Source of the DNA: Styela clava
Lineage: Eukaryota
Assembly (NCBI RefSeq): GCF_964204865.1
Contig: NC_135264.1
Location: 15,128,001-15,192,000 of the forward strand
Direction of reading: 5' to 3'
DNA length: 64,000 nucleotides
The stretch's first letter is position 1. The number at the start of each line of letters is the position of its first letter. Below the pieces are notes generated by a model. The model was not told the origin of the DNA and made no database searches. It saw only the letters and a list, made by a program, of their open reading frames with translations. A program made the translations under genes and the position numbers. Below are positions 342 through 64,000 of the stretch, piece by piece.

Positions 342-403
342 TTCTCTCCTACTGCCGCCTGTGTTGCAATCAACAGCAACGACAAGATTGACAGTAATTT
401 CAT
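342..403 (-). CDS. First coding (signal peptide) exon of a second A2M/CD109/TEP paralogue; gene continues off the left end of the window
   Basis: Reverse strand reads cag|AATTAAACAGTCTAAG ATG ... MKLLSILSLLLIATQAAVGE-AA|gtaagt. Exon is 342-419; the 62-nt coding part matches plus-strand exon 31800-31877 (MKLLATLSLLLIATQAAVGE) in length and phase. Confidence 0.85.
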
Positions 404-9452: not shown

Positions 9453-19827
<10,375 letters not shown>

Positions 19828-43800: not shown

Positions 43801-46800
43801 ATCTGGCAACGATATCACCAAAGACAAGGTAAGAAACTTTTATCTTCTACATGGGGGTGTTTCAGCACCTTGATAAGGTTCTGTACAAAAGAGAAGGAAC
43901 CTAATAAGTGGTGGGATTCAAATTTTTTGTCAGCCGGTTCCTTCACAAAAGTTATATTTTTCAGCCGGTTCTGTTAAAAACAGAACATTGACAGTAACTA
44001 GTAATGCTAACCGGTTCGCTGATCTCATAAAAATCAGTGAGACCGTTTCATAGATCCGTTGCGAACTGACTGAATCCCATCACTGGACCTAATCCAGACC
44101 CAATGTAACCCCAGATCCACAAATATACAAACTTGTTCTATCTTTTTAGATTTTCCAAGACTTGGATAAATATGGAGCTTCAAGCGGTTCCATTGGCTGG
44201 GGCGGCGGATGGGGCAGATGGTGGTGGCCATACCCCATAGGAGGTGCTGATGTTAGTGAAGTATTTGATGTAAGTATCTCCCTACGACTAATCAATCATT
44301 TTTTATGTGGCGCTCATTTGGACCTCTCGCTCCGACCAAGGCCTGGGCAAAAACAGTCTTCCAATTCTCCATTTAAAACTACATTCGTATAATTAGAAAT
44401 TTATGAAAAATGTTTTAGACATGAACCCACACAAAAGTAGGAGAACAGATATCAAAAAACACGTTCCGTCAGTAATAAAATTCCATGCGCTTAGAATATC
44501 AAAATTTGCGCGTTCATCTGTGTGGTATTCTCTTCCAGTTACGAAACTCAATTGAAACAAACAGATTTCTTAGTAATCTTCATTCTCTATTACTTAATCT
44601 TTGTAGTCATAGTCAAGTTTATTTTTTTCCAACCAGCAAAATAATAAATATTCTTCAGTTAAAATACTTGTGTTACCATTTACAATTGTCAACTTTTACG
44701 TAAAATATCACCACTTCATTTTTGTATAAGCTTTGTATAATGGTTTTGAGCCCTAAAAAAACAGTGCACTAAAATCAGTTTTCAAAGTTGCCAGAACCGT
44801 GTCCGACTCCATGGGAGTGCAGTGTCAGTATTGGTGTGAGACATTATTTTCATCTATCTAAATTGCTGTTTTCTTTTATTCCAGAACTCCGGAATCCTTG
44901 TTCTTACCGATGCTCTCGTCTATTCAAGCAAGCCGGACTGTGAGTTTGGTTTATTATTTTTTTGCCTTTGCAGTCAAATTCATTCGCCACAAATTACACT
45001 TTCGCGCCAAAACGGGTACACGAACTTCTAAATTCGGGCCTCGAAAAATTGTTTTTAAAGGGAAGAATTATTATATATTTGGTTTTATCGAAAAATTTCT
45101 TGACATAGAATTATTTGAAAATTTCAACTATTGTATGTAAAAGTTCCGCATTAGGGAATCGCCCTAGACATTCAAACACATGCGAAAATGTCTCTTTTTA
45201 TTCAAAATTTCAATTTCCTAAAATCGAATTTGACTGCGAAGGCGGCTTCTTGCATCAAATAATAATATCAGTTAGTGTACTCCATAAGAGACTGGTACAA
45301 ACGTGTTTGGAGTTATTTGTCTGATATTATAGTTTGGTGCAAAAAAAATGTGTTTATCCTTCGTCATGGCCCCTCACAATAGCGTGACTTGGCGGAGGAT
45401 AATCTGTGCAATTTTAGCGAAGTTAGACGAGGTTAAGTCAAATGTTTCAGCTTTAGTTTAAGTGTTAGTGTTCTGTACTAATGTTTTGGAGTTTGAGATT
45501 GGTTAAATCTGTCTCCTATTTACGAGACATTGAAAAACGAACTAAATTTAACAATTCAACCCGACCCGACTATGGGGTAAAAGAATAGATTCCTGCATTA
45601 GTTTCAATCCGTAATAGCAAAATTTTGGCTGTAGAATCTATTTATAAGTTTCTGTCAGAAATTTCAATCTCATGTCTTGAAGTCTGGTTTAAAATTTGTA
45701 AATATAACAAATTTGAAGCTGCGAACCTATTACCAGTAAAGATCGCTAAATTTAGACTTCATAGCTCTGTATTTCCTTACCATCAGATCGAACTTATGCT
45801 CTTACAAGTATAGTCAGTTATTGAATGTACAGACTAGTTCAGATATGTTGGATAAAAGTGCTACCAGGAACTTAAATCACAAACTTTTAATGCAATGATA
45901 CAAATGTAACCATTTTAGTTAGTATGTATAATCTGGTACGTTTACGTCATGATACTAACACTTATAACACACGATCAGATGATTTTGGTTGTCCGTTTTG
46001 TGGAGGCGGAATTGGATTCGGTGGCGGAGCAGGGGGAGGTAGACCAATCAGACTCATGTCTTTTTCTGCCAAACCTGCTCCCTTGAGACGCCAGATGGCG
46101 CAATCGTCTTCCGTGCCAAAAACGAGGAGCTACTTTCCAGAAAGTTGGATCTGGGCTAAAGAAGAGATAGGGTTAGGAAAAAATTACGGTTGGAATAACG
46201 AGAATGCAAAGAAGTTTATTAACCACAGAGTGTTTAATAAAGCATGGTTATTGAAAACTCGTCACGATAACGTCACAAATTTGTTACGTCATCAGATAAC
46301 CGAATACCACAAATTAATTTCCATAACTAATAAGGTGTGAATCAAAAGTTCGACACATCAGCTTCTTTGAAGCATAATTGACGTCATAACCCTGGTGACG
46401 TCATACAAATATTTCACAGATTCTGGTAGCTTTTTTCGACCGTTTCGGCCTCTTGGAGCGAGAAATTTGGTAATGGCCATGCCGAGAGCCCTGATGGGGT
46501 TTGCGAAACCCGCGCCAATGGCACGGCAGTATTCGAAGGCAAAGAGTTCCGCGCCAAAGACCCGCAGTTATTTTCCTGAGTCCTGGATATGGGCAGATGA
46601 ATATATAGGGTTAGAGACTGGTGTTTTAGATATTGGTCATTGGGAATGCAATTTTCGTGGTTTGAGGTGCTCTGAATCATGAAAACTAATGAAAATCATA
46701 TTTGCATCTTGATAATTCGCACGTATTGGAAGTTGTTAGTTAAATTTTCAAAGCATTTCCAATTATTCAACACTATTTAATTTAAAATGAAGACCCTAGC

Positions 46801-49800
46801 AGAAATATACATATATAAAACCTGATAAATTAATTTCTGAAAAGGCTCAGAACCTTGCCTTAGAAAACTTATAAATATTATGTTATGGAATTCCGATTTT
46901 ATCAGGGAATAGAGGGATACTTCGGAGAATTGCTGGTGAACCCATCGCGGAGGATAGAGGAGGTGCAAAAGCATGGGCCTTATTTTACACCAGAAAATTG
47001 AAAGCTGAAATTGCGGCGCAAAAACTCCGAAGTTATTTCCCAGAAACTTGGATATGGAGTCAGAGTTATATAGGGTTAGAAAGTCATATCTCAAATGCAT
47101 TGCTTGAATTTTTAAACTAAAAATCTTAGGAGATGTTTGTGCCATAGCTTTGCTTGCTACATTGCAAAAATCTGGCCCATGCATGTCGCCACCGTCTTGT
47201 ACATAAATATCCAAGTCTCGAAAGAATTACTCCAAAAATAAATCTACGATATACCGACAAAACTCTAATGTCATTATCGCCAAGCATCCAATCTTGACAC
47301 TTTGAATTAATTAGTATGGTAAATGCAGATATGCAGAGTTTGCAAACAGCCCGATAACATTTAAAATTGAAAACACATAAATTCACCTAAACGAAAAATA
47401 TCCGTACCGGCGAACGGAAACAGCCGCCCAATCTTAAACGTTGAGCTGGCTCGATATTTCGTAAGTTCTATACTTAGGTTTTTCTTTTACCTCTCAATGC
47501 ATTCCATATATTTGAGTTAGTTTTGTTCGATGAACTAAGTGAAAAAAACTACAAAGATGTAAATTGTGAATCTCCCCTTCTCCAATCGGACGATATTTCT
47601 CATTTCGATGTTTCGATCCGTCAATCATCTCAAATCTCAAGAATGTTCACTCTTTGCACGAGGATAGCTCACCCTTTAATAATTAAATCACCGGCCATTT
47701 TGCCTTCAAAACATATTACTATCCGACCCCAAAGTCATGTTACAAGACTAATGATATTTGGATCGGCAGTGGAGAGTATATGTTATTCATTTTAGCGATT
47801 TGGCCAAAAGAAGAAACTATTTGTATAGAAATCGAAGGAGAAAAAGTGTGCCATACTTTTGCCTTACCACAACCCATAATGTTATCGGCATCAGCACCGG
47901 CAACAGCTGTACTGAGATCACCAGAAGGAACAAATAATGTCAAAGTCACAAGATTTTTTTTCCCTGAATCATGGATCTGGACGGATAGTATTTCAGGGTA
48001 CGGGCTCTCAAAAGTTGCCTCCGCCTCTTCAAAAAGCGTTGAAATACCACGCTCTGTCCTGCTTTGTCGGATCATATATGTTTCACAACTATATGATAAA
48101 AATGTGGCATGAGTTATGTTGGAAGTTCGTCGTAAGTTTGACACAAACAACTGGTCGACTTGCCTCATACCTGTCTGATAACTGGACAAGGAAACATGCT
48201 TCTTCGTATATTTAAGTCGTCTTATCTGTTTTCCTCCATCCCCCAACTCACCCCCTGATAAATATACAGAATAATACTTTTGCAGACAAATGTTCACAAC
48301 TCACTAAAATGAGAATCAGTACATTGTCGGCTGGCTCGTCGTTAAAATCATCGAATTGTTAGTTGCCAGAATAATCGCATTTTAAAGAAAAGCACCAATG
48401 CTGCTATTTTACACTTGGTTGATTTTCGATTTTGCGTAAACCACGCCTTATTCAATGAAGTATACTTGCAATTCGACTCACTGGTACTGGTAGACAAGAC
48501 ATCCGACCGAAAACGTCATCTTACATTTGTACTACATCTACCAGTTGGAACTATAGTCTACTCCATCTGATTCGATATTATTCTAACGATTGAAACAACC
48601 CAACAAAGAAGCGAATGGCGGTTAAGAATTGGGATGCGAGTATTCTGACCTGTCATGCGCCAGTGCTGATAATTCTTAGATGTATAATTTATTTCGAAAA
48701 CTCCATGATGTAAACTAATTCAAATGCAGAATTCTGGAAAGCGAGAAAAACCTAGTTAAACGAGACTTAGGCCAGAAATAAACAAACAAAAACTCGCGAA
48801 CGTCTTGATAGTTGAAAACTCCATAATGTAAACTAATTTAAATGGAGAATTCTGGAAAGCGAGAAAAACCTAGTTAAACGAGACTTAGGCCAGAAATAAA
48901 CCACCAAAAAGCCGCGAACGTCTTGATAGTAGACGCCCAATATAGCAGTTATATTACATGCCTTCAATATGAAGTTAGATGACAGGTAGAGCAAATAGCT
49001 TTTGGAAACTTCATTACGGTATCGCTTCCGAACTCGAACTGTTTAGCTGCGACGCGACACTTGCGATACCCCATATCACTGTATAGTATTTGTTTTGAGG
49101 GGTTAGTGACACCTAGAGTTAGAATATACTATATATTCTTTATTCGAGAGACGACGCATGAGCGATAGCATTTCAGTTTACTGTATATGTTGACTTGCAT
49201 CACTTCTCAAATAATCTTTACTTCAGTCATTCAACCGATATTTTCGTGTCGTCGTAAACGAGGACTCCTACGAAATAAGAGATGTGCTATGTTCGATCGA
49301 AAAGATATGCTTAGACCAGCAGCGCCAGGAATGGCTGCTAACTCCGGGCTGCGATTCAAGGGAGATTCGAAACAAACATCGAAAGCTAGAACGAATTTTC
49401 CCGAGTCCTGGATCTGGACGGATAGTACCTTAGGGTACGGTTTGAGCTAAAATAGATGAATGTTACACAAGCTGGTATTATAGGTGAACCCCGCATGTTT
49501 TCAAACTCATACTTCAATACCCAGCCATGGTATGTGTGATGAACTGGATAAGCTTTACGGTCTTTCCAAAAACATAACAGCTCTCTCTTTCCGGTCTGAA
49601 GCCTACATCGGAACATGGTGGGGAAATTCTCAAATCGTGTTTGCACGAGATTTTTTACAGAAACACTTCACGCACACACGACCAGGCACTGCATTCACTC
49701 CACACAGCAATTGATTTTTTTCAAATAAACAAATTGGTTACGTATTTGCTAGTTAGACGTTGAGTACACTTGCTACTCTCTGTTAAAGATTCTTTCCGTG

Positions 49801-52800
49801 TGCGTAAGAACTGCGAATATCTTGGTTTTGCAATGAAAGATTAGCATTGTTTCGCCGCTGCGTCTGAAACGCTGAGCTGGTACGCTATTTTGGTAATTTT
49901 CACTCTATTTTATTGTTTCAATCTTACATTATCTTCGAATTAGTTTTACCCAGCTAACTAAGTATAAAACGCTGAAGAATCTTTAACTTTGAGACGACAG
50001 CCTACTTTAATCGAATGATATTTCCAATTTTTCAAAAACTATCACTAGGGGGGGACACAGGGTGCCGCATGACTGAAGACGGATTTGAAGTCTGCGCAAT
50101 GATGATGATGCGAGGTATACAGGATGAAACGTTTATCATGAACTCTCCCCCGAAAACAAGATCTTTTTTCCCTGAGACTTGGATTTGGACCGAAGATAAA
50201 ATAGGGTTAGATCTAAATACTGCATGAAATGATTCATCATCTAACTATACTCGCCTACTTTACTTACTTGCTTGATTTAATCATTAACATTCTTCTTGTA
50301 CTTTGTGACATATGCTTCAAACAACATAAACGTAAAAGTTATTTCGAGTAATCTAAAAAAAAACACAAAACATATCAACAACTCACACACATGGACGCTG
50401 CGACACTTGAGATATCATATTTCGACAAAGTATTTATTGTGACATCACGCATTGTTATGACGTCATGTTGTACTCCTCCACGAGAAAATTTAGATACGAT
50501 AGTACAGGGTTAGGTTAGTAATATAGACATACCTGTACATTATTAGTAACATTCCGATCTTTTTTATCGCTCCAGAAGTGTGTGTACTAATATGGAGGTA
50601 ACTAATTTTGTTCGCCTATTTTTTATCCATTTGTGTAAAGGGACTGAAACATATGATCTGAAACATACAAAGCAGTGGCCTCTTTTCAGAATTTTGTATG
50701 GCGTGAAGACATGAAATATAGTTATGGAAGTTATAGTAACAATATTTCCAAATTTTTGATTTTAAGTTTTTGATCCATGCCCGCGGTGCATGCGACCATT
50801 TTTTGGCGTTCAACGTATCGTTGGCGGTCCTGCTGATGGGAACATTCGTCACAGAGTCTCTTCAGGAATAACTCCTGCAAAAGCTACATCCACTAAAACG
50901 ACGAGGAGTTATTTCCCAGAGTCGTGGATATGGGCGGATGAATATATCGGGTTAGAAACGCTTGCTTGTGGCTTCTATCGTGTGATAGAATCATCTTATG
51001 AACTTGCATGTGTATCTCTGCTTTGTCGTAAATGAATCATAAAATTTACTTTAAGTCTGATTTTGATTATTTTATATAATCTACTCTTTCTCAGCAAAAT
51101 CACGATTGCAAATTTAAACTTTCAAGTCATAGTGATTTCGTAACAGAAATGACAAATTTGAAGAAAATTACTATGCACAATAAACATAAAATTTTCATAA
51201 AATCTGATTTCGATTATTCTACTCTTTCACAGCAAAATCGCGATTGCAAATTGAAATGTACATAATGTAATAAACAATAAACCGTAATAATCATTTCTCA
51301 CATAAAATGGCGAATGCCAATAAAAAAACAAAACATCCTAAACCAGTTCTCAAACTTTCATTATCTGTGGACCCTTTTCAAAGACTCCCAACACCAGTGG
51401 TTGTTGCTTAGTTTGACAAACACCCAAATTATTTTTTGGGTTAGTTAGGTATAGGGGGCAACATTAACAGAAACTGGCCCCGGGCACCAGGAAAGTTTGA
51501 CACGTCACTGTCCAACAATTGTATAGATCTGCTCTTATTAAATGCCAATTTTTGTTTTAATAAGTTTCTATTCGTTATTTTATGCACAGTTTTGCAGACA
51601 GCACTAGTTTTTGAAATGTATTGTTATTGTGTAAGGGTATCATCATATAGATCAGTGTCTCTCAGCATTTATCTCTTGTGTCCCATCTGTAGCGTTAAAA
51701 AACCATAAGCCGGTACATGCAATTGCTGAACAGGCAATTGCTGTTGCTATTTTCGATGCATTTTTTTTTCAAATACTACGCTGACATTGTTTCTTAAAGC
51801 AAAACGCTCTTAGGTTTCCATCAACGTAGTTTATACGGAATCATTTTTCATATATCTATATGTACGTAGTCAGTGTAGTCAGAGACCATACGTCATCTCA
51901 TGGCACATCTTGTCCTGTTATGGTATATCATGTCACATTTTATTGTGACATCACGTTTTGGTATGACTTCATGTTGTACTTACTCACGAAGGGATTTAGG
52001 TACGCTATTGCAGGATTTGGTTAGTAATATAGGCATAAAAGTTTATTATTAGTAACCTTCAGATAAAAAAATTCGCAAAACAGTAGCTTTTTACAGAGCA
52101 GTAGCCGCTTTCACAGAATTTTGTTAGAAGTGAAGACAGGAGAAATGTCGTATAAGTAGTTTCGTAAGAATAATTTGAAATTTTGCTTCAAGTTTTTGAT
52201 CGATGTCCGCAGTGTATTCGTGTAAGAATCTTTGGCGGTGCTGCTAATGGGAACATTCGTCACAGAGTCTCTTCAGGAATAGTTCCTGCAAAAGCTACAT
52301 CCACTAAAACGACGAGGTGTTATTTCCCAGAGTCGTGGATTTGGGCGGATAAATATATCGGGTTAGAAACGCTTGCTTGTGGCTTCTATCGTGTGATAGA
52401 ATCATCTTATGAACTTGCATGTGTATCTCGGCTTTGTCGCAAACGAATCATAAAATTACTTTAAGTCTGATTTTGATTATTTTATATAATCTACTCTTTC
52501 ACCGCAAAATCAGGATTGCAAATTTAAACTTTCAAGTCATAGTGATTTCGTAACAAAAAAGACAAATTTGAAAAAAATCACCACGCACAATAAACAGGAA
52601 ATTTTTATAAAGTATGTGTTCCATTATTCTGCTCTTTCACAGCAAAATCACGATTGCAAACTAAATGCATATAATATATTAAAACCTGAAACAGAAATAA
52701 TCATTTTTCAGCGAAATATCGCAAATACCAACAAAAACAAAAGGGTACTCCTGAAGAAAGTATGCGCACCAAGATGTCGCGTAACCTGAAACTCAACCTG

Positions 52801-55800
52801 GTACACAACCCGAGTTCAGGTTGTGCGCCATCTTGGTGCGCATACCTCAGGAGGTCCAAAAGAAGACTTTCTAAATCTGTTTTCAAACTTTCCTGATTGG
52901 GGACCCCTTTTAAAGACTTTCAAACACTTGTATACATCTGCGCCAAGTTTCGTTTTGATAAGTTTCCATTCGTTATTTTATGCACAGTTTTGCAAAAATC
53001 TCTAGTTTTTGAAATGTATTGTTAATATGTAAAGCTATAAGTTTATAGTCATGTAAACCAATGGTTCTCAGTCTTTTAACTCTTGTGGCTCATCACTGTA
53101 TAAAGAACCTTAGGCCGACACAATGCACGTTGAGGAACACCGCTGTAAACGGTGTGGCAGCCTTTAGATTGTCAGTATTTGTACGCGTATTTTCTCGGTT
53201 AGTTTTTTAGGTGGGAGGATCATTGATAGCAAGCCAGGGAAAGTTAGTTTTCAGTAAATCGTTCAAGAATAGTGTAAAATGGAGTTGGAAAAAACGTAAG
53301 AATTTATGTCTCACTACCAATGCCACAAAACGTTTTCTGTTTTTAGTCTTTGGATCTAGCCCTTGTTGCATGAGAAGACAATTTATGCGTCGGCGACCCG
53401 GTAATGCCCGTATTGTGGGTGGAAACGATATGAATAGAAACGCTCCTCCCGCCGCAAAAGTGGGGACTTCTACCAAAACAAGAAGTTTCTTTCCCGAATC
53501 GTGGATTTGAGCGAATGAATACATGGGGTTAGGATTCTCGATGGTTGTTAGTTGTCTGCTTCTGGCTTGTCTATGCTTGTACTATTACGACAAGCAGTAA
53601 TGCTGCATGCGTTTTTTTTTCGAACAACTCAAGTTGTTTTCACATTGTAGAATATAAAATAAATACAAAAAAAACAGGAATAAAACATAATGAAACAATG
53701 TTAAATTCACTGTTATGTAAAACGTAATAAATAAGTCATAAGGTGACCCACGAAAAAATTGTTACCATGTCATTGCGGAACACATTATAGGGCAAGAGTG
53801 GAAAATTGCTTTTCTAAAGGGGCCACGCAAATATAATATACTTGGGAGGCTACTGGGAAGACGTTCAAAAATCGATATGAAGCTGTGAAGCTGTAAAAAA
53901 CATTTTTTTTGCAAATAACTGGACTCGATAATAATCGCATGTCTGCTCATTTCACTGATGTAATACAATAGGTTTTAGTTAAAATTTATAGCCATAAAAA
54001 CAGTAGTAGTAATTTAGTCGGGCACAAGAGGGCAGGATGAAACCCTTCGGTGGGCCGGATTTGGCCCGCGGGCCCCAATTTGACCATCCTTGTTTTAAAA
54101 AGAACATAACTTGTTTTTACATTTAACTATCTTCATTACGAGTCTTGTGTGCATAGAATAAACATACTGAGTTAATATATGATTCAATATATAGTCAATA
54201 TGATGCCTAAGTTTAATATAAATCTTACCTAGAAAAAGCGCGAAGCGAACTGCGACTGCATGAGTTGAGGTGGCCTAAATGCCAGGCAGGTACCTTAGTT
54301 TTAGATCAAAATAGTAAACTTGCGTTAAGGAAGTACACATGCATAAAATTCAGACAGGAAAGAAATCACTATAGGGCGTAGAACGAGAATTGTATTAGTG
54401 AAATTTGTACTTTTTTGCAATGGGTTACTTATTATTTCAAAGTTCCAATGCATCCATGGATGCTTTTCCGCCTCGGAGGCCCTGGACCAGAATCGGCAAT
54501 GGCGATGGCGGGACAGCCTGGTATGGCGGGACAGCCTGGTATGGCGGGACAGCCTGCGCCACCACCTTCCCAACCTGGACAACCTGGAGGGTCTCAGCCA
54601 ACTAAAGCTCGGAGCTACTTCCCAGAATCTTGGATTTGGACAGAGGAGCTTGTGGGGTTAGGAATTATTTTAAACATAATTGTCTTGCAACCTGGCATGT
54701 TTTAAAAATCATCATTTTATTTTTGTTCTGTGATTAGCTAAAAGTTTTATAAAATGCCACGCCTACTTTTTGAAACGCTCAACTAACCAAATTATTGCCT
54801 AACGCATTACGCAATCGGTGCTGGTGACGTAATATTACTAAATAAATCAAAAAAGGAACATGTTGTTTTGAGTCCGATTCATCAGAGAAATCGTTCTTAA
54901 AATGTTGAATCTCTTCACCGCATGTATTACATTACTGAAGAACATTTATAATTGCGATATATAATATTTAGAAATACGTGATTTGGTGGAGACTAGAAAC
55001 TTCGTTTTCGGGCCTTGTTTGAACACATTGCTTCTTTTCGAAAAATTTCATAACATTAATTAACAAACGAAGGATATATTTCACATTGTGTAACACATAG
55101 TAATCAGCGGAAAACCCCGTGCTTTAGGCACAATGTACAGACTTCTTATGATTGAACGTAGCGTTTCTTATTATTATATGCTCACGAATCTGATATCACA
55201 AAAATAGGAAATCTCTAATATGTGATGAGTCCATATATATGCCTCAAAGTAAAGAGGTAGTCTTGAGGATAGTCTTGAATACATTATAAAATATAATTGG
55301 TCCACTCAAACACAGCACATCCGGTCCATATTAACTTTAAACAGAATTTGCATGTTTTTTTTTCATTTGCGAGCAATCAAAAATCATACGTTAATAACTC
55401 ATGCCGATTTCGTTTATTTTTTATTTTTTGCTCATGGGACAAAAATACTTGACACTATTAAAAATGATCAGAAACTTTATCTAAATTACACAAAAATTCG
55501 AATATCAGAATACAATAGAGATCATTTAGAAGGTAACAAACACGTCTTAAATTCGTCTTACCAAGTAAGGCGGCTTATTTACGGGCATCGGTAATATTTT
55601 GTGTTTGACGGTAAACTAATCAAATGATTGAATATTATATATGTAATCTTATACGCAGAGTATGGTATATGTTACAAAAACAAACTGAGTTAGTTTTGAG
55701 CAAATAGGAATCTGTAACGTAAATATCAAATAACCAGAAAAAAATCATCAAAATTAGCGTATAAATTAGTTACAAACAGTAATACAGACTGAGAGTCAGA

Positions 55801-58800
55801 TGTAGAGTCTTTATATTGTTTATTTTGTTTCCTCGTTGTATAGGAATCGTTGTTTTGTAGTAACTAGTTTTTGTCTTTTTTTTATAATTTTGTTAGGTTG
55901 AGCCAAGTTAGTGAGTGATGAATAAAATTTCGCGCGCTCATATTGTTTACTCATGAATGAGTGTGTGTCAATTAGCTTGGGATAAATTCTGGTAGAGCAA
56001 CCAAAGATTATTCTGTTATGCTCTTATATTCAGCTTTTTACAGTACGATACGGTAGTATCTATATTCGAAATGTAATCATAAAGATATTTACGTATTTAT
56101 TTAATTAGATGCGAGCCGGTACGTTCAAAATATGTACAACCTTCGTAGTCGTGAGGCTTAAACTCAATACTCTATATCGCTATCTCGTGGTCAGAAAAAT
56201 ATCAGATTTTAAAATATTCTAATCTCTGACGACCTTTTCACATCTTTTCAAAGTTGGAGAATTCTATTATTACGACGGTCCAGTAGGATTGGCAGGTGTA
56301 AATTTCAGAGGGATGGCGGAGGTCGATTTTGAAATGCTTGCAGATTATTCGATGGACTTTGACATGGACGACGCTGATGGATTTGCAGGGAGTTCCCAGC
56401 AATTAGGCTCCAAAACAAGGAGTTATTTTCCAGAATCTTGGATTTGGACTGACAGTAAAACGGGGTTTGTGATCTGTGTTATTAATCAGCAAAATCGCCC
56501 GACATGCGAATGGGTGGTGTCATTGAAATAGAAATCACTGAATATTTTGGGATGTCAGAAACATGTTGTTCTATAATTTTAACATTTGGTTTGTTTATTT
56601 TGGCAAGTTGTAAATGAAGTATGCAAAAAATACTGGTAGATTCCTAAAAATGGGGTTGACTTGTTCTATTAATCTCCATACCGACATGCTGAGACCTCTG
56701 TACCACATAATAACACTCTTTTTTGACTAATTGGTGAATTAATTGATTGAAGATCACATCAAATCTTCAGTTATGATTAACCATTGAATTAACTGAAAAA
56801 TTCGATACTAATTTACCTCAAATACCACTAAGGTTGTGAATCCCAAAACAAGAACACACATGTCGTGTAGGATTACATACGCATTCTGGCATTTGTATAG
56901 AATCATTTAACAGCAGAAAAGATCACAATGTTTCGAAAGTTGAATTTGAACTCCCGTATGCGCGATCTACTTGTCGGCGGTTTGTTTTTTGGGCGTTCTT
57001 GGAATTTCATGATAGTCAGCGAACTCGTTTCTAGACCCATGACCTACATTGATTTCTCGTTGTTAGCGAGTCCTACACAAAAGAGAACCTGTTACAAGAT
57101 TTTTGAATCCCAGCACTGGTGGACTATTTGTTGATCGACAATTAGAATATATAACATAATTTCCTCATTTTGGTCTCTGACTTCATTTATTATGGTAATC
57201 TGATATATATCTGATATGGCCAAATCCTGCCAGTTCGGTAATTCAATCTGGCCCGCTCGATACTGCCGCAACCAAACTGAAAACAGATTTTGATATTTGA
57301 GCTAAAAATAGCTCAAGAATTTTATTGAGATTTCGATTAAATTTAGTTTTGTCACGAGGCTTATTGTTTTCCACTTTTCTTTTTGTAACGCTGTAACTAT
57401 TTTTCATAAAATGTATCTTTTACATCACACTCACATGGCCCGCCAGTCTTGGTGGGCAAAATTTTTGGCCCTTGATCCAAAAACTTTGCCTACCCCTGCC
57501 TATATCCATGCTCATAGTATCATATCAACAGATTATCGATCAAGGCCAAACAATACGTCCCTTTGCACGTAAATTCAGAATTGGAACCTCGCGTTCGCCC
57601 TCCTTTTTGTACAGACTAGAGATAGAAAACAGCTGAAGGTTTAGCTTAGAGAAAGATCTAGTTCTGTCCAGAATTGCAAAAATTGTACAGGTTACCACAG
57701 CACCACAGCTTTATCTAAATTTGAAAAGGAAAAGTTTATTATCTTTACCAAACTAGAAAACACACTACACGCACACATACATATGTATACAAAGTTTTCA
57801 GTAAAAAACTGAGTAAGCAACGTTTCAGGGTTATCGTAGTCTGTTATCATAACGTCTGTTTCCGACATTGAATTAATAAATTTGCCCCCTTGCAAGGATA
57901 ATTATTTATTATCATTTATCAATTTATTTGAAGACCCCTTTGGCGGATTGGAAGGAAACGGTTTTCACTTTTTCCCTTCGGTTCCCATGGCTCTTGCGAG
58001 GACGGAATCCAGAATCGTTGGATCCAATAAGCAGTCCGGAGCTTCAAAAACTCGAAGCTATTTTCCGGAGTCATGGATATGGACTGATGACCATACAGGG
58101 TTAGCTTGAAATTCGAAATACATTCTTCGCATGCAATGTGTGCTTTATATTATCGTGCATGTGCCGACTTATTTTGCACGATCCGCCTCAAAGGCCTATC
58201 GTGTCCACTAGCGCATACACCAATGCTCATCCTTTTTCTTAAATGTTGCTATGACTTACTTTGTATATCACAATTTGTAATTTGGCGTAGAATGTCGATA
58301 TTATGACTTCACACTTTTGGTATGTGACGTCCCTCTTTGGTATTATGATATCACAGTTTTGTTTTATGATGTCACGTTTTGTGATATGACGTCACGCTTT
58401 GAGTGTTCTACTTTTTGTCAGAATGTAAAAGTTATCCCAATTATTTGCTCAATGCATTTATTCTATGATTTAGTATAATACAGTATAGGTTCAGTTATAC
58501 TGGGGGAAATTATTTACCGTATATCATTACCGGTAATTATACAGGGTGTCTAAAAATTCGCCTGATTTTATAGTAATAACAATTGTAAGTTTAAATAAAT
58601 TTTATTGTATGATAAAAGAGAATTACAAGCACAATAAGAACTATTAATAAAAACATCATTTGTGTCGTGCCGACACAAATGCTAATATATCCGAAATGTG
58701 CATTTTTGCTCTGAAACGTTCATATGGATGTAAAATAGAATAGTATTTGAATCGTGACGGACGGAGAGTCACAGCCGTGCATAAATTGTTTTGAAAATAG

Positions 58801-61800
58801 TTGTATTTTGGAAACTGAGAAAAAGAAAAGATATTTGATGTATGTTTACTTCAGTAGTCAGCACTGGGGGGGAATTAGTAATGCCCATCGTAATAGTCAG
58901 GCTTATGACTTTGATAATGTTTTATGCAGCTGGCATCTTTACAGATTAGTTACAGATTAGCTTGAAAACCAACAACTAAAATTACGATCTCGCTAAATCT
59001 TTCTTGTGTTTAATAATATTTCTCTCTAGGGGGCCATGGTCGACCAATGCCAATGATGATGGCTATGAACGCTGCGCCTATGCTTAGGTCGGCAGTGCCG
59101 GTAATGAAAGGAGCCTTTCGGCAATCGTCGACTAAAGTTCGAAAGTACTTTCCTGAAACATGGATATGGGCTGAAAAGAGTTTAGGGTTTGTTTGTAGAA
59201 AAAACATGAATAGACAAATGGTCTGGTCTGGTTTAGCACGATTTTGACCTTCACATCAAATAACAGCAACGACACTGTGCTTTTGCGTAATGGTCATGCT
59301 TCAATGAATTTTAATAATAGTTGTGTAACCTAAATATAATTCAGGTTGTGAGACAAGTTGCATTCTTTTGCATGAATAGAAAAGTTTGTATCTGGGCACA
59401 AAAACAGGCTGCAAGACCTTAAATGCAATTTTACTTTTAAATCTTTTCAGGGAGACATGGACCAATAATGTTTAAAACATTGGAGTTTGCACGAATGATG
59501 TTAGGAAGTTCCTTTACCAAATCTGCACAAAGTATTGTTAAAGTTCGGAAATATTTCCCAGAAACTTGGATCTGGACAAATGACACCATAGGGTTGGTTC
59601 GAGGGTGTAGTGTGATCATGAATCATGTAATACCATTATTATTAGGGGCGTCCACCACAGATATTTCAAGGGGGGAGGTGCAAATCTGCAAATGACTTAC
59701 TTCTTTTGGGTTGGTCAGCTGGACGCCCATGGTTTGAACATCCTTAACCCAATAATCCTTATCATCCTAACTTGTCATGTTAGTGTAAATTTATCCCTGA
59801 TTACATTGAATGGTTTGGAATGTAATAAACTCATGATGGGGTTGGACCAAAAAACACGAGGGCATGCATAACGATTTTGAGTTTCAAATAATCCTATTTG
59901 CCAGTTGGTTCCGTGCTCGAGAATGCAACTTGTCAATTATCTGGACAGTAGTTGAACTAGGTGATTGCAGTTAGCTATGTACTGTGTGCAGCTGTAGTTT
60001 TGTTTTGTAGTATCATTAGAGAAATCATATCATTTGAACTTTTCCATACTCAATAATTTCATCCTCATTCATTCATTTCTGTAGTTGTATGTTAACATGT
60101 CTGATTGTAGAGTTTGTCATTACTGTATTAACATAGAAAATGTGACTTTCATCTTTCCATGTTGAAAGAAATGTACTGAGTAGTTTTTCTTTGTTTGTGA
60201 AATGCTGCCTACAATTTCAAGTTATGGTTCGAAATTAGTACAGCAGAAAAGTGTTGACGAAAAGATGAAAAGGGTAAATTGTAGTCATGCAATTTTAGAA
60301 GGTTAATATGTGTGAGTGACTGTTTTTAAAATGTTTCTTTGAGGAGAAGACATATTGTAGACTTGGCTACTAAAATTGATGTTCTTGTTTTTATTGTAAA
60401 GTTAGTGTTATATCGATCAGTTATTAAGAACCTTACTGGTAGAAAAATTTGTATGAAACATTGCTATAATGGAGTTGAGTGTTCATGTTCTCCAAACTAA
60501 AGTGGATTTGGGCATAGCAAGTTGGGCATGTCTAGAGCATAGCTTAGCCGAAATTGAATCGCATTATTTACAGATGTACACACCATGTACAGCGAGTACA
60601 GGTGTTTAAAGTGAAGTGTTCTTTTTTTTAAAGTCAACTACTTCTGGCTTGAAGAAGACGCGCAACATGTAATGTTTGCCATGGCGACAGATGATGGAGC
60701 TCCAGTCAATAAAGTATTAGTAGATCAAGGCTCAGCGTCTACCCCTTCAGTAACAAGAAGTTTTTTTCCTGAATCTTGGATTTGGACAGATAGTCAGATA
60801 GGGTGGGAATATGTGTGAAGTGTGTTATACTTTTCAAAGTTTGTCTTGTGTGTTTTGACAGTCTTCCGAACCCCACGAGTCTTTGAGTCTTGTTTCATCA
60901 TTTTTGTGATGTTACCTGGCAATTAGATATACCTCCAGTTTCCTAACCTACTGTCTACATGTCAAATCAGCAGCAGAAAAGGTCCTTCAAGTGATGTTTG
61001 CGGAATTTATAAACATTTATATAAACATCACTAATTCTAAATGTAGCTGTATAAACTATGTAATGCTCTCAAATATCCAGTTTGGTATAGCAACACTTAC
61101 ATCCATAGACATAGACTCACTAAATTCATTTTTACATTTCGTTTTAAAAAGCAATTCCATATACTTACATCTACATAAATATGATCTCAAACATTCTATT
61201 TGCTCAGGTATTTTCAGAGATTATCGCTTTCGTGTGTCACCAACTAAGGCTTAAAGTACTTGCAACCTTTTTTACAGCCATACATTCATAACAACCCTGT
61301 CTATAATATATACGCCTTAAACATTTTAAAGACAATTTTTTCTTACTAGTTAATTTAACTACTTAAATTAAATACTTGTGATCCTGCTAATAATAAAATA
61401 GCTCGGAAAAAGCTCACAATGCGATCCAAGTGTTATATTAACCTTACAGATACACAGATTTCACTGTTCAAGCAATAACCTTCGACTCTCATATTTCTCC
61501 TTCGTCATCCTTCTACTATGAAAAGCATTGGTTTAATAACGTTCGCCTAGCTTACACAATAAGTTGCGCTTACATGTTACTTACTGCAAATCTGCGCTAA
61601 ATACTACAAATCTGCGCTAAATACTGCAAATCTGCGCTAAATACTGCAAATCTGCGCTAAATACTGCAAATCTGCGCTAAATATCGCTGCTTCAAGCTCG
61701 CATATATCTTCTTCTTCCTTGTAGCTAGGCTGTAAATGAACAAAACCCTCTATCTTTGTCAGAAAAACATCTATTACTCGTTACATTCATTCCACAATTC

Positions 61801-63802
61801 ATTAATATTGCATGATGCATGTGTTTATACTTCTTCAATTTAACAATTAGCACTAGCATGGTTGAATTTAGTATGTCACGAACATAAATTGAATGAAACT
61901 TGGCATTGAATCTAATTTGAGTTGGCACCCAATTCTGCTTAATATGAAACAGTATATGCCTGAAATCATTGCTTCAACCAGCTAATGAGAAAAGTAATCT
62001 GCACCTGCTTTGGCCAGTATTGTTTTCGCTATAACCCTTTTCTTGGAAAAAGTTATAGACGCATGATTTTACCATTAGCTTACATTGTTACAATAGTGGA
62101 TGCATGAAATTTTTAACATCACATATATTGTGTTTATTTAACTTGTTTGCATGTTTACTTGCTGTAGTGCAGTTTCTTGCATTTTTATTGTTAAGTGGCA
62201 TTGTTGCAATTGGTATCTCGAAAATGAAAAAAAAAATCTAATACAAACAATACATACCAAAACTGTCTGGCAATGCTGTTTCCAATTCCAATAATTCCAT
62301 TTGCAACATCTTGGTGATTGCATGGGCTTGCTTGCTGCATGTTAGAATAAAGTTAAGTCCAAAATGTATGATTGATTCATCCAAATTGATAAAAAAAAAA
62401 TATAGAAATATTCGGTACTTTTTATTTGTTTAAATCTAATTTTATCATACATTTTGGATTGTATGTTGGTAGCTTAAAGCCTGTTTACACCCCATATTTT
62501 GATAAATTCAGTTTGTATAAAAGTAATCATAAATTTAACTGTTCAGCTTTTCCCATACCTAATCTGGCAGACCCTCAAATTATGATAATTTATTATTAAA
62601 TTGTTTTATTGACTTCCACGCTTAAGATTAAATAGGAAATCTCACTTTTTTTTTATTCTATCCCATTGTTAACGTGATTTAATGATAGGAAATAAGAATG
62701 AATAAAAAAATTGGTATTATCCAATTTTTAATTAAAAAATCTACTCATGTTTGTTGGGCCTTGCTGGACTTATACTTATCCTAAATTATGATCTGAAACC
62801 AACATCGCAAATTGATGTGATGGATTTGTTTATGACTTTAAATTTATTGAAAATCATTTTGCAAAATACTTGGTGTAAACAGGATATAAATTCAAAACTT
62901 TGACACAATTTTTAACGTTGTTTTTCTCCAAATCCAGGGACGATGGTTCGACAACTTTTACCTACAACACTCCCGATACAATCACTACCTGGGAGCTCAG
63001 TAGTTTTGCTGTTTCTGACAAGAAAGGTCTTGGAGTCACTGATGAAACATCAAAGGTTGAATTTGTTAACTGACTCTATTTCTGGTTATGATTGTGTACC
63101 GAGTGCTATGAACATGTTTATCATTGTAAATTTCCCGCGTGCATTACCATGTTGGGGCTCTTATTATAATGAATGTACAAACCCTCTTCAACACAGGATG
63201 GTATGTTTTGAATAAACTGCATTTTACCTTTATTAAATTTTATATTACTGATAGTTTCACATATTACCAAACTATACCAGCAGTTCTCAACCTTTTTTCT
63301 GCACTTCCAATTTGGGTCTTCGTTTCCAACATATTACATCCTACAATAAAATTTAGCCGCTGATTGAACTTCTTTTTTTTGTCGAAATTCATTCAAAGTA
63401 ATTTCATCCCCATTAGAGACCTCTCAATTACTCATCGGTTGGAAACAACTGCAATAGACTAACACATTGGAAGAAACCTTTGAATGTTTTCAAAACCTCA
63501 AATATTCGCATATGTGCAAAAAAGTACTACATTGGCAATCTCATTTTGTTACAGATTATTACTAAAAAATAAACATGATGAGATACTTCCTAAACGAGCT
63601 TCAAGCTCGTGATTATTGGGATGATAATATCATCAACTGAAATCTGACCATGAACTAGATTTTATTTAAATTACCCTTTATATCACAGATCACAGTCTTC
63701 CGCAACTTCTTCATTTCCCTGAATCTTCCTCCAACCATGATCAGAGGAGAAACACTGAATATGAAGACGACCCTCTTCAACTACTTTGATGATGAGCTGA
63801 CA
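31816..63802 (+). CDS. Alpha-2-macroglobulin/CD109/TEP-family protein, N-terminal part (MG domains, bait region, start of A2M domain); gene continues beyond the window
   Basis: Constitutive exons: 31816-31877, 32311-32468, 33139-33167, 33416-33593, 34492-34706, 38237-38364, 38997-39102, 39400-39538, 40401-40495, 40719-40801, 41455-41605, 42588-42767, 42990-43199, 43679-43828, 44150-44269, 44885-44939 (2059 nt = 686 codons + 1), then one cassette, then 62938-63055 and 63689-63802. Family motifs: IFIQTDKAIYQPG, VEEYKLPKFKV, FTFGQPVKG, SPSNTFIQV, DGEIVADS, GLRAIDQSVLLLKSGNDIT, FPESWIW, PDTITTW, FFISLNLP..IRGE..FNY. The thioester GCGEQ would lie downstream of the window and was not seen. Confidence 0.93.
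43906..44085. mobile_element. Small hAT-like MITE in a TEP intron
   Basis: TIRs AGTGGTGGGATTCA / TGAATCCCATCACTG; near-identical 8-bp flanks AACCTAAT / GACCTAAT. Confidence 0.7.
45979..46171 (+). CDS. Alternative bait exon 1: YDFGCPFCGGGIGFGGGAGGGRPIRLMSFSAKPAPLRRQMAQSSSVPKTRSYFPESWIWAKEEIG
   Basis: cag| ... GG|gttagg, 193 nt (3n+1), open frame. Confidence 0.85.
46420..46609 (+). CDS. Alternative bait exon 2: YSGSFFRPFRPLGARNLVMAMPRALMGFAKPAPMARQYSKAKSSAPKTRSYFPESWIWADEYIG
   Basis: cag| ... GG|gttaga, 190 nt. Confidence 0.85.
46906..47074 (+). CDS. Alternative bait exon 3 (absent from the ORF track): WNRGILRRIAGEPIAEDRGGAKAWALFYTRKLKAEIAAQKLRSYFPETWIWSQSYIG
   Basis: cag| ... GG|gttaga, 169 nt. 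Confidence 0.85.
47796..47997 (+). CDS. Alternative bait exon 4: SIWPKEETICIEIEGEKVCHTFALPQPIMLSASAPATAVLRSPEGTNNVKVTRFFFPESWIWTDSISG
   Basis: tag| ... GG|gtacgg, 202 nt. Confidence 0.85.
48697..48930 (+). repeat. Tandem duplication of ~117 bp
   Basis: GAAAACTCCAT(G/A)ATGTAAACTAATT...CGCGAACGTCTTGATAGT twice, head to tail. Confidence 0.85.
49227..49434 (+). CDS. Alternative bait exon 5: FIQPIFSCRRKRGLLRNKRCAMFDRKDMLRPAAPGMAANSGLRFKGDSKQTSKARTNFPESWIWTDSTLG
   Basis: cag| ... GG|gtacgg, 208 nt. Confidence 0.85.
50049..50205 (+). CDS. Alternative bait exon 6: WGDTGCRMTEDGFEVCAMMMMRGIQDETFIMNSPPKTRSFFPETWIWTEDKIG
   Basis: tag| ... GG|gttaga, 157 nt. Confidence 0.83.
50767..50950 (+). CDS. Alternative bait exon 7: FFDPCPRCMRPFFGVQRIVGGPADGNIRHRVSSGITPAKATSTKTTRSYFPESWIWADEYIG
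   Basis: aag| ... GG|gttaga, 184 nt. Confidence 0.82.
52193..52361 (+). CDS. Alternative bait exon 8 (recent duplicate of 7): FFDRCPQCIRVRIFGGAANGNIRHRVSSGIVPAKATSTKTTRCYFPESWIWADKYIG
   Basis: aag| ... GG|gttaga, 169 nt. Confidence 0.82.
53347..53527 (+). pseudogene. Alternative bait exon 9 with an in-frame stop: FFGSSPCCMRRQFMRRRPGNARIVGGNDMNRNAPPAAKVGTSTKTRSFFPESWI*ANEYMG
   Basis: tag| ... GG|gttagg, 181 nt; the conserved Trp codon TGG reads TGA at 53508-53510. Confidence 0.78.
54443..54656 (+). CDS. Alternative bait exon 10: FPMHPWMLFRLGGPGPESAMAMAGQPGMAGQPGMAGQPAPPPSQPGQPGGSQPTKARSYFPESWIWTEELVG
   Basis: aag| ... GG|gttagg, 214 nt; internal 18-bp tandem repeat at 54505-54556. Confidence 0.83.
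56254..56464 (+). CDS. Alternative bait exon 11: FGEFYYYDGPVGLAGVNFRGMAEVDFEMLADYSMDFDMDDADGFAGSSQQLGSKTRSYFPESWIWTDSKTG
   Basis: aag| ... GG|gtttgt, 211 nt. Confidence 0.8.
57934..58099 (+). CDS. Alternative bait exon 12: YPFGGLEGNGFHFFPSVPMALARTESRIVGSNKQSGASKTRSYFPESWIWTDDHTG
   Basis: aag| ... GG|gttagc, 166 nt. Confidence 0.8.
59030..59186 (+). CDS. Alternative bait exon 13: WGHGRPMPMMMAMNAAPMLRSAVPVMKGAFRQSSTKVRKYFPETWIWAEKSLG
   Basis: tag| ... GG|gtttgt, 157 nt. Confidence 0.85.
59451..59592 (+). CDS. Alternative bait exon 14: WRHGPIMFKTLEFARMMLGSSFTKSAQSIVKVRKYFPETWIWTNDTIG
   Basis: cag| ... GG|gttggt, 142 nt. Confidence 0.85.
60634..60802 (+). CDS. Alternative bait exon 15 (absent from the ORF track): FNYFWLEEDAQHVMFAMATDDGAPVNKVLVDQGSASTPSVTRSFFPESWIWTDSQIG
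   Basis: aag| ... GG|gtggga, 169 nt. Confidence 0.83.
61582..61683 (+). repeat. 20-bp minisatellite, 5 copies
   Basis: (TACTGCAAATCTGCGCTAAA)x5 with one mismatch. Confidence 0.9.
61809..62341 (+). promoter_or_regulatory. Putative intronic splicing-regulatory cluster of Rbfox-type (U)GCAUG motifs
   Basis: TGCATG at 61809, 61816, 62101, 62148, 62319 and 62336; GCATG at 61856 and 62061. Confidence 0.55.
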
Positions 63803-64000
63803 GTGAGTTTTCCGAGCTTATAAAATCGATTTTCATCAAAGTTAAGGATATACAAATTCATTGATTTGCCAACCAAAAACAAATAAATAAAAGTACACAT
63901 ACAATAAAAAAAAGAAAAATGTTTTTTAGTAAAGACCGGATGGAGCGATAGGACCATACGATCATGAGAGTCAGTCCCCTACATTATAGAGACAGCCTAC

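What the first reader, a model, noticed from the sequence alone, without database searches (positions are those of the whole stretch)
54505..56297. Collagen/MMP-substrate mimic baits (exons 10 and 11)
Seen: exon 10 has an 18-bp tandem repeat encoding Gly-X-Y triplets GQP-GMA-GQP-GMA-GQP, and exon 11 has GPVGLAG (56277-56297). Exon 2 has PLGA and exon 5 has APGMA. Established: collagenases cleave fibrillar collagen at GPQG|IAGQ or GPQG|LAGQ, and P-x-G|L peptides are standard MMP substrates. Inference: these are dedicated baits for matrix metalloproteases or bacterial collagenases, one of them built by minisatellite expansion within the exon.
Basis: partly seen in the sequence, partly recalled or inferred. 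Interest (0 to 1): 0.75.

Follow-up and report, generated by a model that had tools for sequence, protein, structure and literature searches.

The report
Two alternative protease-bait exons, sea squirt
These are two of fifteen interchangeable "bait" exons in an immune protease-trap gene of the sea squirt Styela clava; one looks like the spot where collagenases cut collagen, but whether it is aimed at such enzymes is untested.

Summary
The window is Styela clava. Its + strand carries a CD109-like thioester protein gene with 15 tandem bait-region cassettes. Exon 10 (54443-54656) holds a perfect 18-bp x2.9 repeat encoding GQPGMA units. Exon 11 (56254-56464) encodes GPVGLAG.

Both exons are used. 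RNA-like contigs end exactly at exon 10's splice sites. RefSeq isoform X2 carries exon 11. The repeat has two or three copies in different runs, so recent slippage built it.

- GPVG|LAG matches the collagenase consensus. The 7-residue pattern occurs once against 0.003 in shuffles, but it was chosen post hoc.
- The exon 10 repeat lacks the generic Pro-x-x-hydrophobic MMP motif. It is five Gly-X-Y triplets and falls below Pfam's Collagen cut-off.
- Exon 10 is instead a 43-residue tract with no basic, aromatic or branched residues.
- Neither motif appears in the neighbouring paralogue, elsewhere in the genome, or in the Ciona, Clavelina and Phallusia proteins fetched.

No cleavage data exist. Alternative bait exons are a known kind. 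The scan's earlier notes concern this same window, not other DNA.

The parts
54443..54656 (+). Cassette exon 10, 214 nt. It enters with 2 nt completing a codon and leaves with 2 nt of a Gly codon. In-frame peptide: PMHPWMLFRLGGPGPESAMAMAGQPGMAGQPGMAGQPAPPPSQPGQPGGSQPTKARSYFPESWIWTEELV.
   Evidence: RNA-like contigs of run X11 lie on 54443-54534 and 54568-54657 with unaligned letters beyond, and no intron coverage. Acceptor ttcaaag|TT and donor GG|GTTAGG.
54505..54556 (+). Perfect 18-bp tandem repeat x2.9 (unit ATGGCGGGACAGCCTGGT) encoding MAGQPG units. In-frame and variable in copy number.
   Evidence: TRF score 104, 100% matches. 18 bp 'left out' at 54505 in DNA run X1 (1 contig, depth 14.6) and in X5 (1 contig, depth 2.9), but not in X11 (0 of depth 83.9).
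54571..54588 (+). Second small tandem repeat, 9 bp x2, encoding QPGQPG.
   Evidence: TRF, 100% matches.
56254..56464 (+). Cassette exon 11, 211 nt. In-frame peptide: GEFYYYDGPVGLAGVNFRGMAEVDFEMLADYSMDFDMDDADGFAGSSQQLGSKTRSYFPESWIWTDSKT.
   Evidence: RefSeq isoform X2 (P0284, P0288) contains exactly this bait between LTDALVYSSKPD and DDGSTTFTY. A 164-nt contig of run X6 lies on 56298-56461 with 0 differences, depth 3.6. Acceptor ttttcaaag|TT.
56277..56297 (+). GPVGLAG, a candidate collagenase/MMP-type scissile site (G|L).
   Evidence: Sequence. It is the only GP.G[LIM] among the 15 cassettes. Among 175 TEP baits examined the pattern occurs only in the two copies of this isoform.
44885..44939 (+). 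Constant 55-nt mini-exon (NSGILVLTDALVYSSKPD plus 1 nt) that splices to whichever cassette is chosen.
   Evidence: The loose letters before 59030 in the exon-13 contigs of X5 and X6 equal the end of this exon.
62938..63055 (+). Constant exon downstream of the array (DDGSTTFTYNTPDTITTW...), start of the Pfam A2M domain.
   Evidence: The loose letters behind 59187 equal its start, so exon 13 joins it directly and skips exons 14 and 15. Pfam A2M E 1.7e-9.
45979..60802 (+). The whole array of 15 alternative bait cassettes. Exon 9 carries an in-frame TGA inside the WIW motif.
   Evidence: RefSeq isoforms use exons 1, 2, 5, 6, 7, 11, 12 and 15, one per protein.

Best explanation
Exons 10 and 11 are two of 15 mutually exclusive cassettes. 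Each cassette encodes the protease-sensitive bait loop of a secreted, thioester-containing CD109-like / alpha-2-macroglobulin-homologue protein of the ascidian Styela clava. One cassette is spliced between a constant 55-nt exon and the first A2M-domain exon, so each transcript encodes a trap with a different bait. A protease that cuts the bait triggers the thioester trap; this step is inferred from the family. The bait sequence therefore decides which proteases are caught. Exon 11 offers a near-consensus collagenase-type site (GPVG|LAG) next to an aromatic and a very acidic stretch. It probably adds MMP-type enzymes to the set that trigger this isoform, without being exclusive to them. Exon 10 is a 43-residue Gly/Pro/Gln/Ala/Met/Ser tract with no basic, aromatic or branched residues, made by recent in-frame slippage of 18-bp, 9-bp and 6-bp units. 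It most likely acts as a restricted bait. It would be poor for trypsin- and chymotrypsin-like enzymes. It would be open only to enzymes that cut Gly/Pro/Ala/Met-rich unstructured chains, such as gelatinase-type MMPs, bacterial collagenases, or elastase- and subtilisin-like or prolyl-specific enzymes. Shown: gene family, exon borders, expression, one-cassette-per-transcript use, repeat polymorphism. Inferred: everything about which protease cuts where.
For: Family: Pfam A2M_BRD (E 8e-12 and 2e-6) and A2M (E 2e-9 and 5e-10) flank the array. GCGEQ and the rest of the gene lie just downstream. RefSeq names it CD109 antigen-like [Styela clava]. Splicing: the exon-13 contig joins both constant exons directly. 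Fourteen RefSeq proteins each hold one cassette. RNA-like contigs stop at exon 10's borders. Exon 10 is an outlier: its longest run free of K/R/F/Y/W/L/I/V is 43 residues, against at most 13 in the other 14 cassettes, and 39 of 52 core residues are G/P/A/Q/S. Exon 11: GP.G[LIM]AG was seen once against 0.003 expected. Linear GPQGIAGQ is an MMP-degradable peptide (PMC11026400). Principle: replacing the human A2M bait with Gly-Ser repeats abolished cleavage by 12 proteases, and inserting an MMP substrate made the protein MMP-selective (PMC8267569, abstract and passages). Possible targets exist: 23 Peptidase_M10 matches at about 10 loci in this genome. Other cassettes also look like substrates: R[IV]VG was seen 3 times against 0.02 expected.
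Against: There are no cleavage data. The motif was chosen after it was seen. P.G[LIMVFY] is not enriched (1 against 1.46). The GQPGMA unit has no Pro-x-x-hydrophobic site. No conservation was found. The own-genome search finds exons 10 and 11 at full length only at themselves. The adjacent paralogue lacks the whole exon 7-14 block. The 22 ascidian proteins looked at included Ciona, Clavelina and Phallusia proteins and four S. clava paralogues; 21 had a recognisable bait, and none has GP.G[LIM] or a Gly-X-Y run. G/P/A/M-rich low-complexity baits are common in mollusc TEPs, so exon 10's composition may be family habit. Variable copy number argues against tight constraint on length. Exon 11 was seen only at low depth in the RNA-like runs (3.6 and 0.89).
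Confidence: 0.6

Rival explanations
1. One reading: both cassettes are dedicated collagen mimics, selected to trap matrix metalloproteases or bacterial collagenases and little else.
For: GPVG|LAG matches every fixed position of G-P-x-G|[IL]-A-G. Exon 10 has five Gly-X-Y triplets and Met-Ala-Gly-Gln after each Gly. MMP genes are present. An MMP-selective A2M can be made by bait design (PMC8267569).
Against: The exon 10 unit lacks Pro at P3 for a G|M cut and lacks a hydrophobic P1' for a Pro-P3 register. Pfam Collagen is far below its cut-off. Five triplets are too few for a triple helix (my own knowledge). Exon 11 has many aromatic and acidic residues open to other proteases. No conservation was found.
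Confidence: 0.15
2. Chance features of fast-evolving, weakly constrained loops. The cassettes only need to be exposed and cleavable by something, and the 'collagen-like' look is slippage-driven low complexity plus one lucky heptapeptide.
For: The repeat is perfect and polymorphic. Cassettes differ between the two RefSeq releases: exon 1 by several residues, and exons 7 and 12 by indels. Similar G/P/A/M-rich tracts occur in Haliotis, Pecten, Lingula (GPAGPAGPAGP) and Anopheles (PVGMAG) baits. The motif is absent from relatives.
Against: Exon 11's peptide is identical (71 of 71) in the two RefSeq releases while five other cassettes differ (only two assemblies). The array as a whole carries non-random substrate-like motifs (R[IV]VG 3 against 0.02; P..[LIM] 14 against 7.5, P 0.009). 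Exon 10's 43-residue run is extreme within the array.
Confidence: 0.2
3. The variable region serves target binding or maturation by a host protease, as proposed for insect and snail TEP hypervariable regions, rather than acting as a bait for foreign or matrix proteases.
For: PMC7016707 (passages) says the variable region of BgTEP2 and BgCD109 corresponds to the A2M bait. [quoted passage not shown]
Against: The position is exactly that of the A2M bait, between the two halves of MG6. The thioester is intact. Nothing in the sequence points to a binding fold.
Confidence: 0.05

Closest known systems
BgTEP2 and BgCD109 of the snail Biomphalaria glabrata (PMC7016707)
   Same: A thioester protein gene with tandem mutually exclusive exons for the bait-like variable region: 12 exons over 30 kb in BgTEP2 and 8 predicted in BgCD109. 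The C-terminal part of each cassette is conserved (passages).
   Different: Mollusc, not chordate. No substrate-mimic reading is given in the passages I saw.
CfTEP of the scallop (Azumapecten/Chlamys farreri), Drosophila TEP2, shrimp A2M-2
   Same: 6, 5 and 6 alternative bait-region variants respectively, some induced in a pathogen-dependent pattern (as cited in PMC7016707). CfTEP-B to -F were among the hits.
   Different: Smaller arrays. Their baits are Gly/Pro/Met/Ala-rich but have no GP.G[LIM].
Ciona intestinalis alpha-2-macroglobulin homologue and the Clavelina lepadiformis CD109-like gene
   Same: Same architecture (about 1800 aa; Pfam A2M domains plus PF13385 at the C-terminus). RefSeq isoforms differ only in the bait: Ciona X1-X3, Clavelina X1-X4. 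One Clavelina bait has ENRIVGS, like exon 12's SRIVGS.
   Different: Only 3-4 annotated baits each, none collagen-like.
Human alpha-2-macroglobulin bait region, and engineered 'tabula rasa' A2M with an MMP substrate (PMC8267569)
   Same: The bait sequence alone sets which proteases trigger the trap. A Gly-Ser bait is cut by none of 12 proteases. Inserting a Pro-X-X-hydrophobic site gives cleavage by MMPs only. From memory: fibroblast collagenase cuts human A2M at a G|L bond after G-P-E-G (Sottrup-Jensen and Birkedal-Hansen 1989). I saw only that paper's title, in a reference list. My searches for the site found nothing.
   Different: One broad bait per gene in vertebrates, a tetrameric cage, and laboratory design rather than natural cassettes.

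Membership tests
Alpha-macroglobulin / thioester-containing protein superfamily (CD109-like / ascidian A2M homologue) | Macroglobulin domains, with the bait-region domain and the A2M domain flanking the variable region | tested here: met
   Pfam A2M_BRD E 7.9e-12 and 2.4e-6; A2M E 1.7e-9 and 4.7e-10; weak MG2 matches. Precomputed Pfam for P0165: PF01835, PF17791, PF07703, PF00207, PF07678, PF07677, PF13385.
Alpha-macroglobulin / thioester-containing protein superfamily (CD109-like / ascidian A2M homologue) | Intact thioester motif GCGEQ | tested here: met
   PSGCGEQTM in L025 and at residue 975 of P0284.
Mutually exclusive bait-cassette array (as in BgTEP2, CfTEP, Drosophila TEP2) | Tandem exons of the same phase, each with AG/GT borders, and one per transcript | tested here: met
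   All 15 cassettes end in GG|GT and have an acceptor in the same phase. The exon 13 contig joins both constant exons. 14 of 14 RefSeq proteins hold one cassette each, eight different cassettes in all. No joint between cassettes 10-14 appeared in 4 runs, apart from one odd low-depth 'goes back' joint. An exon 10 isoform was not among the 14 proteins; its use rests on the X11 contigs.
Collagen triple-helix repeat (Pfam PF01391) | A long uninterrupted Gly-X-Y run scoring over the curated cut-off | tested here: not met
   E 0.54, 10.5 bits against a cut-off of 27.2. Only five triplets are in phase.
MMP / collagenase substrate site | Pro at P3, small residue at P1, Leu/Ile/Met at P1' (generic Pro-X-X-hydrophobic); collagen form G-P-x-G|[IL]-A-G | tested here: inconclusive
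   Exon 11 GPVG|LAG meets every position by sequence. Exon 10's repeat does not, because P-G-M-A puts Ala at the hydrophobic position. Exon 10 has one generic site, PWML, near its start. A sequence match is not cleavage.
MMP / collagenase substrate site | Actual cleavage at G|L or G|M by a metalloprotease | not testable with these tools
   Needs digestion of recombinant isoforms or peptides.

The most novel reading that the evidence does not exclude
A chordate, Styela clava, keeps a germline library of substrate-mimic baits in one thioester-protein gene. Different cassettes would copy the natural substrates of different protease classes: the collagen cleavage site for MMPs and collagenases in exon 11, a protease-restricted Gly/Pro tract in exon 10, and zymogen activation sites R-IVGG in exons 7, 9 and 12. 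New baits would be born by exon duplication and by in-exon minisatellite slippage that is still polymorphic. Splicing choice would then tune which proteases are trapped in a given tissue or infection.
Probability: 0.25. Interest if true: 0.7.

Novelty: new member of a known kind. Interest (0 to 1): 0.42.

Why it matters
If single cassettes really carry class-specific baits, this gene would be a natural counterpart of engineered selective alpha-2-macroglobulins (PMC8267569). It would also be a simple system for asking how an invertebrate chordate diversifies innate recognition of proteases. Each isoform can be expressed and digested, and the polymorphic repeat gives natural length variants of one bait. 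If the motifs are chance, the locus is still a clear case of a 15-cassette bait array in a tunicate. That array is only partly annotated: 8 isoforms, X1-X8, of which I saw X2-X8. My two literature searches on ascidian or Styela TEP baits found no paper describing it.

Tried and rejected
Collagen domain: rejected, since the Pfam Collagen match is 10.5 bits against a cut-off of 27.2.

Pseudo-exon or unexpressed exon 10: rejected, because RNA-like contigs end at both of its splice sites.

Recent duplicate of a neighbouring cassette: rejected. A self-comparison of the array shows exons 10 and 11 resemble other cassettes only in the last 34-43 nt. Only exons 7 and 8 share a long block, 673 bp at 84%.

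Antisense gene: the minus-strand ORF at 54328-54657 is just the reverse reading of the repeat. I did not pursue it.

Searches for relatives of the two baits all came back empty.
- Word search with the exon 11 peptide: 1 candidate, none scored.
- Word search with isoform X2 residues 687-757: 12 candidates, none scored.
- Own-genome searches: only self at full length.

These blanks are weak evidence. Isoforms collapse into one representative per 90% cluster; the exon-11 isoform itself is hidden behind P0165. The length window also excludes fragments.

It was not spent on the baits.

Literature: searches for the human A2M collagenase site by residue numbers or sequence found nothing relevant, so that statement is from memory. 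Supplementary tables of PMC7016707 (BgTEP2 cassette sequences) may bear on whether snail arrays hold collagen-like baits. Supplements are closed and I did not open them.

Caveat on the polymorphism: it is read from k-mer contigs, not raw reads. A contig assembler could in principle collapse a short perfect repeat. However, X11's contigs break at the repeat while those of X1 and X5 run through it. That is what a three-copy and a two-copy allele would give.

I built no joined, spliced protein model from the window. Full-length context comes from RefSeq proteins that the tools returned.


Full report
WHAT IS THERE

The window has no N and about 36% G+C. A six-frame scan finds 15 plus-strand copies of the peptide motif [YFN]FPE[ST]WIW between 46.1 and 60.8 kb. 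Each copy is followed about 12 codons later by GG|GT, and each is preceded by an acceptor in one shared phase.

Pfam places A2M_BRD just upstream (42987-43211, E 7.9e-12; 43667-43870, E 2.4e-6). It places the A2M domain just downstream (62879-63070, E 1.7e-9; 63659-63820, E 4.7e-10). The rest of the gene lies in the next 10 kb of the chromosome. It includes an intact PSGCGEQTM thioester and a Cys-rich C-terminal part.

A representative search with one constant thioester-domain exon returned 1076 proteins at E <= 0.001. The sources' names for the best hits identify the organism as the ascidian Styela clava. The gene is 'CD109 antigen-like', about 1830 aa, on a contig of 18,707,400 bases. That is the length of the window's own contig C19.

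THE OBSERVATION

Exon 10 is 54443-54656 and exon 11 is 56254-56464.
- Tandem Repeats Finder reports 54505-54556, period 18, 2.9 copies, 100% matches, score 104. A 9-bp x2 repeat lies at 54571-54588.
- Translated, the tract is ...AMAMA-GQP-GMA-GQP-GMA-GQP-APPPSQPGQPGGSQP....
- GPVGLAG sits at 56277-56297.
- PLGA (exon 2) and APGMA (exon 5) are also present.

ARE THE EXONS USED, AND ONE AT A TIME?

I laid four public runs on 54300-60299. All four are kept as contigs, so depth cannot be used to rank expression. Run X1 covers all 30 bins and so behaves as DNA. X5, X6 and X11 cover mainly exons and two multi-copy repeats, with a few low-depth intronic contigs, so they behave as RNA. Their records are only guessed to be RNA.

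- In X11, contigs lie on 54443-54534 and 54568-54657 with unaligned letters beyond and nothing in the flanking introns. Exon 10 is therefore spliced at exactly the predicted sites.
- In X5 and X6, a 1323-nt contig covers exon 13 (59030-59187). Its loose letters on the left equal the end of a 55-nt constant exon at 44885-44939. Its loose letters on the right equal the start of the constant exon at 62938, so exons 14 and 15 are skipped.
- Exon 11 is covered by a 164-nt contig in X6 (depth 3.6, no differences) and faintly in X5.
- Independently, the 14 RefSeq proteins of this gene (isoforms X2-X8 in two annotation releases) each contain exactly one cassette: exons 1, 2, 5, 6, 7, 11, 12 or 15. Isoform X2 carries exon 11 in both releases.
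- An exon-10 isoform was not among these 14, and I did not see isoform X1.

REPEAT POLYMORPHISM

At 54505, 18 bp are 'left out' in X1 (one contig, depth 14.6) and in X5 (one contig, depth 2.9). They are not left out in X11 (0 of depth 83.9). So 2 of the 3 runs that cover the repeat show a two-copy form. The caveat is that these are k-mer contigs, not raw reads.

Other cassettes also differ between the two RefSeq releases:
- exon 1 differs at several residues;
- exons 6 and 15 differ at one residue each;
- exons 7 and 12 differ by indels;
- exons 11 (71 of 71) and 2 are identical.

HOW GOOD IS THE COLLAGEN/MMP RESEMBLANCE?

For exon 11 it is good at the sequence level. G-P-V-G|L-A-G fits G-P-x-G|[IL]-A-G. 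The type I collagen site lies between Gly775 and Ile776 (PMC2120510, abstract). The linear peptide GPQGIAGQ is degraded by MMP-1, -2, -3, -7, -8 and -9 (PMC11026400, passages).

Shuffle statistics, 20,000 shuffles within cassettes:

| Pattern | Observed | Expected |
|---|---|---|
| GP.G[LIM]AG (chosen post hoc) | 1 | 0.003 |
| GP.G[LIM] | 1 | 0.12 |
| P.G[LIMVFY] | 1 | 1.46 |
| P..[LIM], generic Pro-x-x-hydrophobic, whole array | 14 | 7.5 (P 0.009) |

Exon 11 is not exclusive, though. Its core has nine aromatic and eleven acidic residues.

For exon 10 the resemblance is weak.
- The unit GQPGMA has Ala three places after Pro, so it lacks the generic MMP motif named in PMC8267569.
- A G|M cut would have Gln at P3.
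- Only five triplets are in phase.
- Pfam Collagen scores 10.5 bits against a cut-off of 27.2.

What is striking instead is a 43-residue run without K, R, F, Y, W, L, I or V. The next longest such run in the array is 13 residues. Harwood et al. showed that a Gly-Ser bait in human A2M is cut by none of 12 proteases, and that specificity is then set by whatever site is inserted (PMC8267569). I therefore read exon 10 as a restricted bait, not as a collagen copy.

CONSERVATION

None was found, within limits.
- Own-genome searches with each cassette peptide find the full length only at itself. All 15 (exon 10) and 13 (exon 11) other hits cover only the conserved C-terminal ~20 residues.
- An inverted paralogue lies just left of the window; its first exon is at window 341-523 on the minus strand. 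It is collinear with the window gene through the intron after exon 1 and the start of exon 2, exon 6 and exon 15. It lacks the whole 50.2-60.6 kb block holding exons 7-14. Its RefSeq protein uses the exon-6-like bait.
- I looked at 22 ascidian proteins: Ciona A2M homologue isoforms, Clavelina CD109-like proteins, a Phallusia A2M homologue, one unnamed JGI protein and S. clava paralogues. Twenty-one had a recognisable bait, and none has GP.G[LIM] or a Gly-X-Y run.
- Of 175 baits extracted from all 301 fetched proteins, GP.G[LIM] occurs only in the two copies of S. clava isoform X2. P.G[LIM]AG occurs also in one Anopheles funestus TEP (PVGMAG). A Lingula CD109-like bait has GPAGPAGPAGP. Gly-rich baits are common in Haliotis and Pecten.
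- Word searches for the exon 11 bait were blank. Isoform collapse in the clustered databases makes such blanks weak evidence.

Within the array, exons 10 and 11 resemble other cassettes only in their last 34-43 nt. They are therefore not recent duplicates, while the perfect repeat inside exon 10 is recent.

CONTEXT AND PRIOR KNOWLEDGE

Alternative, mutually exclusive bait exons are known in several animals (PMC7016707, passages): 12 in Biomphalaria BgTEP2, 8 predicted in BgCD109, 6 in scallop CfTEP, 5 isoforms of Drosophila TEP2 and 6 variants of a shrimp A2M.

The ascidian orthologues also show alternative baits in RefSeq: three in Ciona and four in Clavelina. My searches found no paper on this for ascidians or Styela. 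In one search, none of the 15 listed papers contains 'Styela clava'. In one search, none of the 6 papers is on the topic.

The genome encodes MMP-family catalytic domains at about ten loci (23 matches over the cut-off), so endogenous targets exist. Three other cassettes carry R-IVG[GS] (3 against 0.02 expected). That fits the general idea that the cassettes imitate protease substrates.

VERDICT

The features are real, expressed bait cassettes of a known kind of system. Exon 11's collagenase-type site is a clear, testable lead. Exon 10 is better described as a slippage-built, polymorphic, protease-restricted Gly/Pro tract. 'Dedicated MMP/collagenase baits' is not shown. But the genomic cassette arrays of other species could not be read, so this is not decisive.

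Exons were searched one by one.

Noticed in passing
window 341-523 (-) and G000:C19:15098001-15128000 (L031, L028, L032): An inverted paralogue of the TEP gene lies head-to-head with the window gene. Its constant exons are very similar, but its array is reduced: one intact exon-6-like cassette, a broken exon-15-like cassette (FPESWIW motif lost) and remnants of the exon 1-2 region. RefSeq XP_039257930.1 (P0001) is this gene.
   Followed up: partly
window ~9400-20000 (-): An arylsulfatase-like gene sits between the two TEP paralogues (ORFs such as [30 protein letters not shown]). It was identified by eye only.
   Followed up: no
window 53347-53527 (+): Cassette exon 9 has an in-frame TGA inside the conserved WIW (FFPESWI*), so in this assembly it is a pseudo-cassette or a nonsense-decay trigger. 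It still carries ARIVGG.
   Followed up: no
window 57100-57500 and 58550-58650: Two short stretches in the introns have very high contig depth in all four runs (up to 2503), with many loose ends. Copies also lie in the paralogue region. They are multi-copy repeats, probably transposon fragments.
   Followed up: no
window 57934-58099 (+): Exon 12 differs by a 3-residue indel between the two RefSeq releases (PFGGFEGLEGNG against PFGGLEGNG in the window). This is another small in-frame length polymorphism in a bait.
   Followed up: no
L029 (G000:C19:15202001-15212000) and the C-terminus of P0284: The gene continues past the usual TEP end into a concanavalin/laminin-G-like domain (PF13385 in the precomputed Pfam list) and a Pro-rich tail. 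This gives about 1830 aa, as in the Ciona and Clavelina homologues.
   Followed up: no
P0294/P0295 (Clavelina lepadiformis), P0272 (Anopheles funestus), P0270 (Lingula anatina): Similar short motifs recur in distant TEP baits: ENRIVGS in Clavelina, PVGMAG in a mosquito TEP, and GPAGPAGPAGP in a brachiopod CD109-like protein.
   Followed up: no
window 60273 -> 56414: One low-depth X5 contig (depth 4.14) joins intron sequence at 60115-60273 back to the conserved 3' part of exon 11, with only 43 letters on the short side. It is probably an assembly artefact through the conserved motif, or a paralogous sequence.
   Followed up: no
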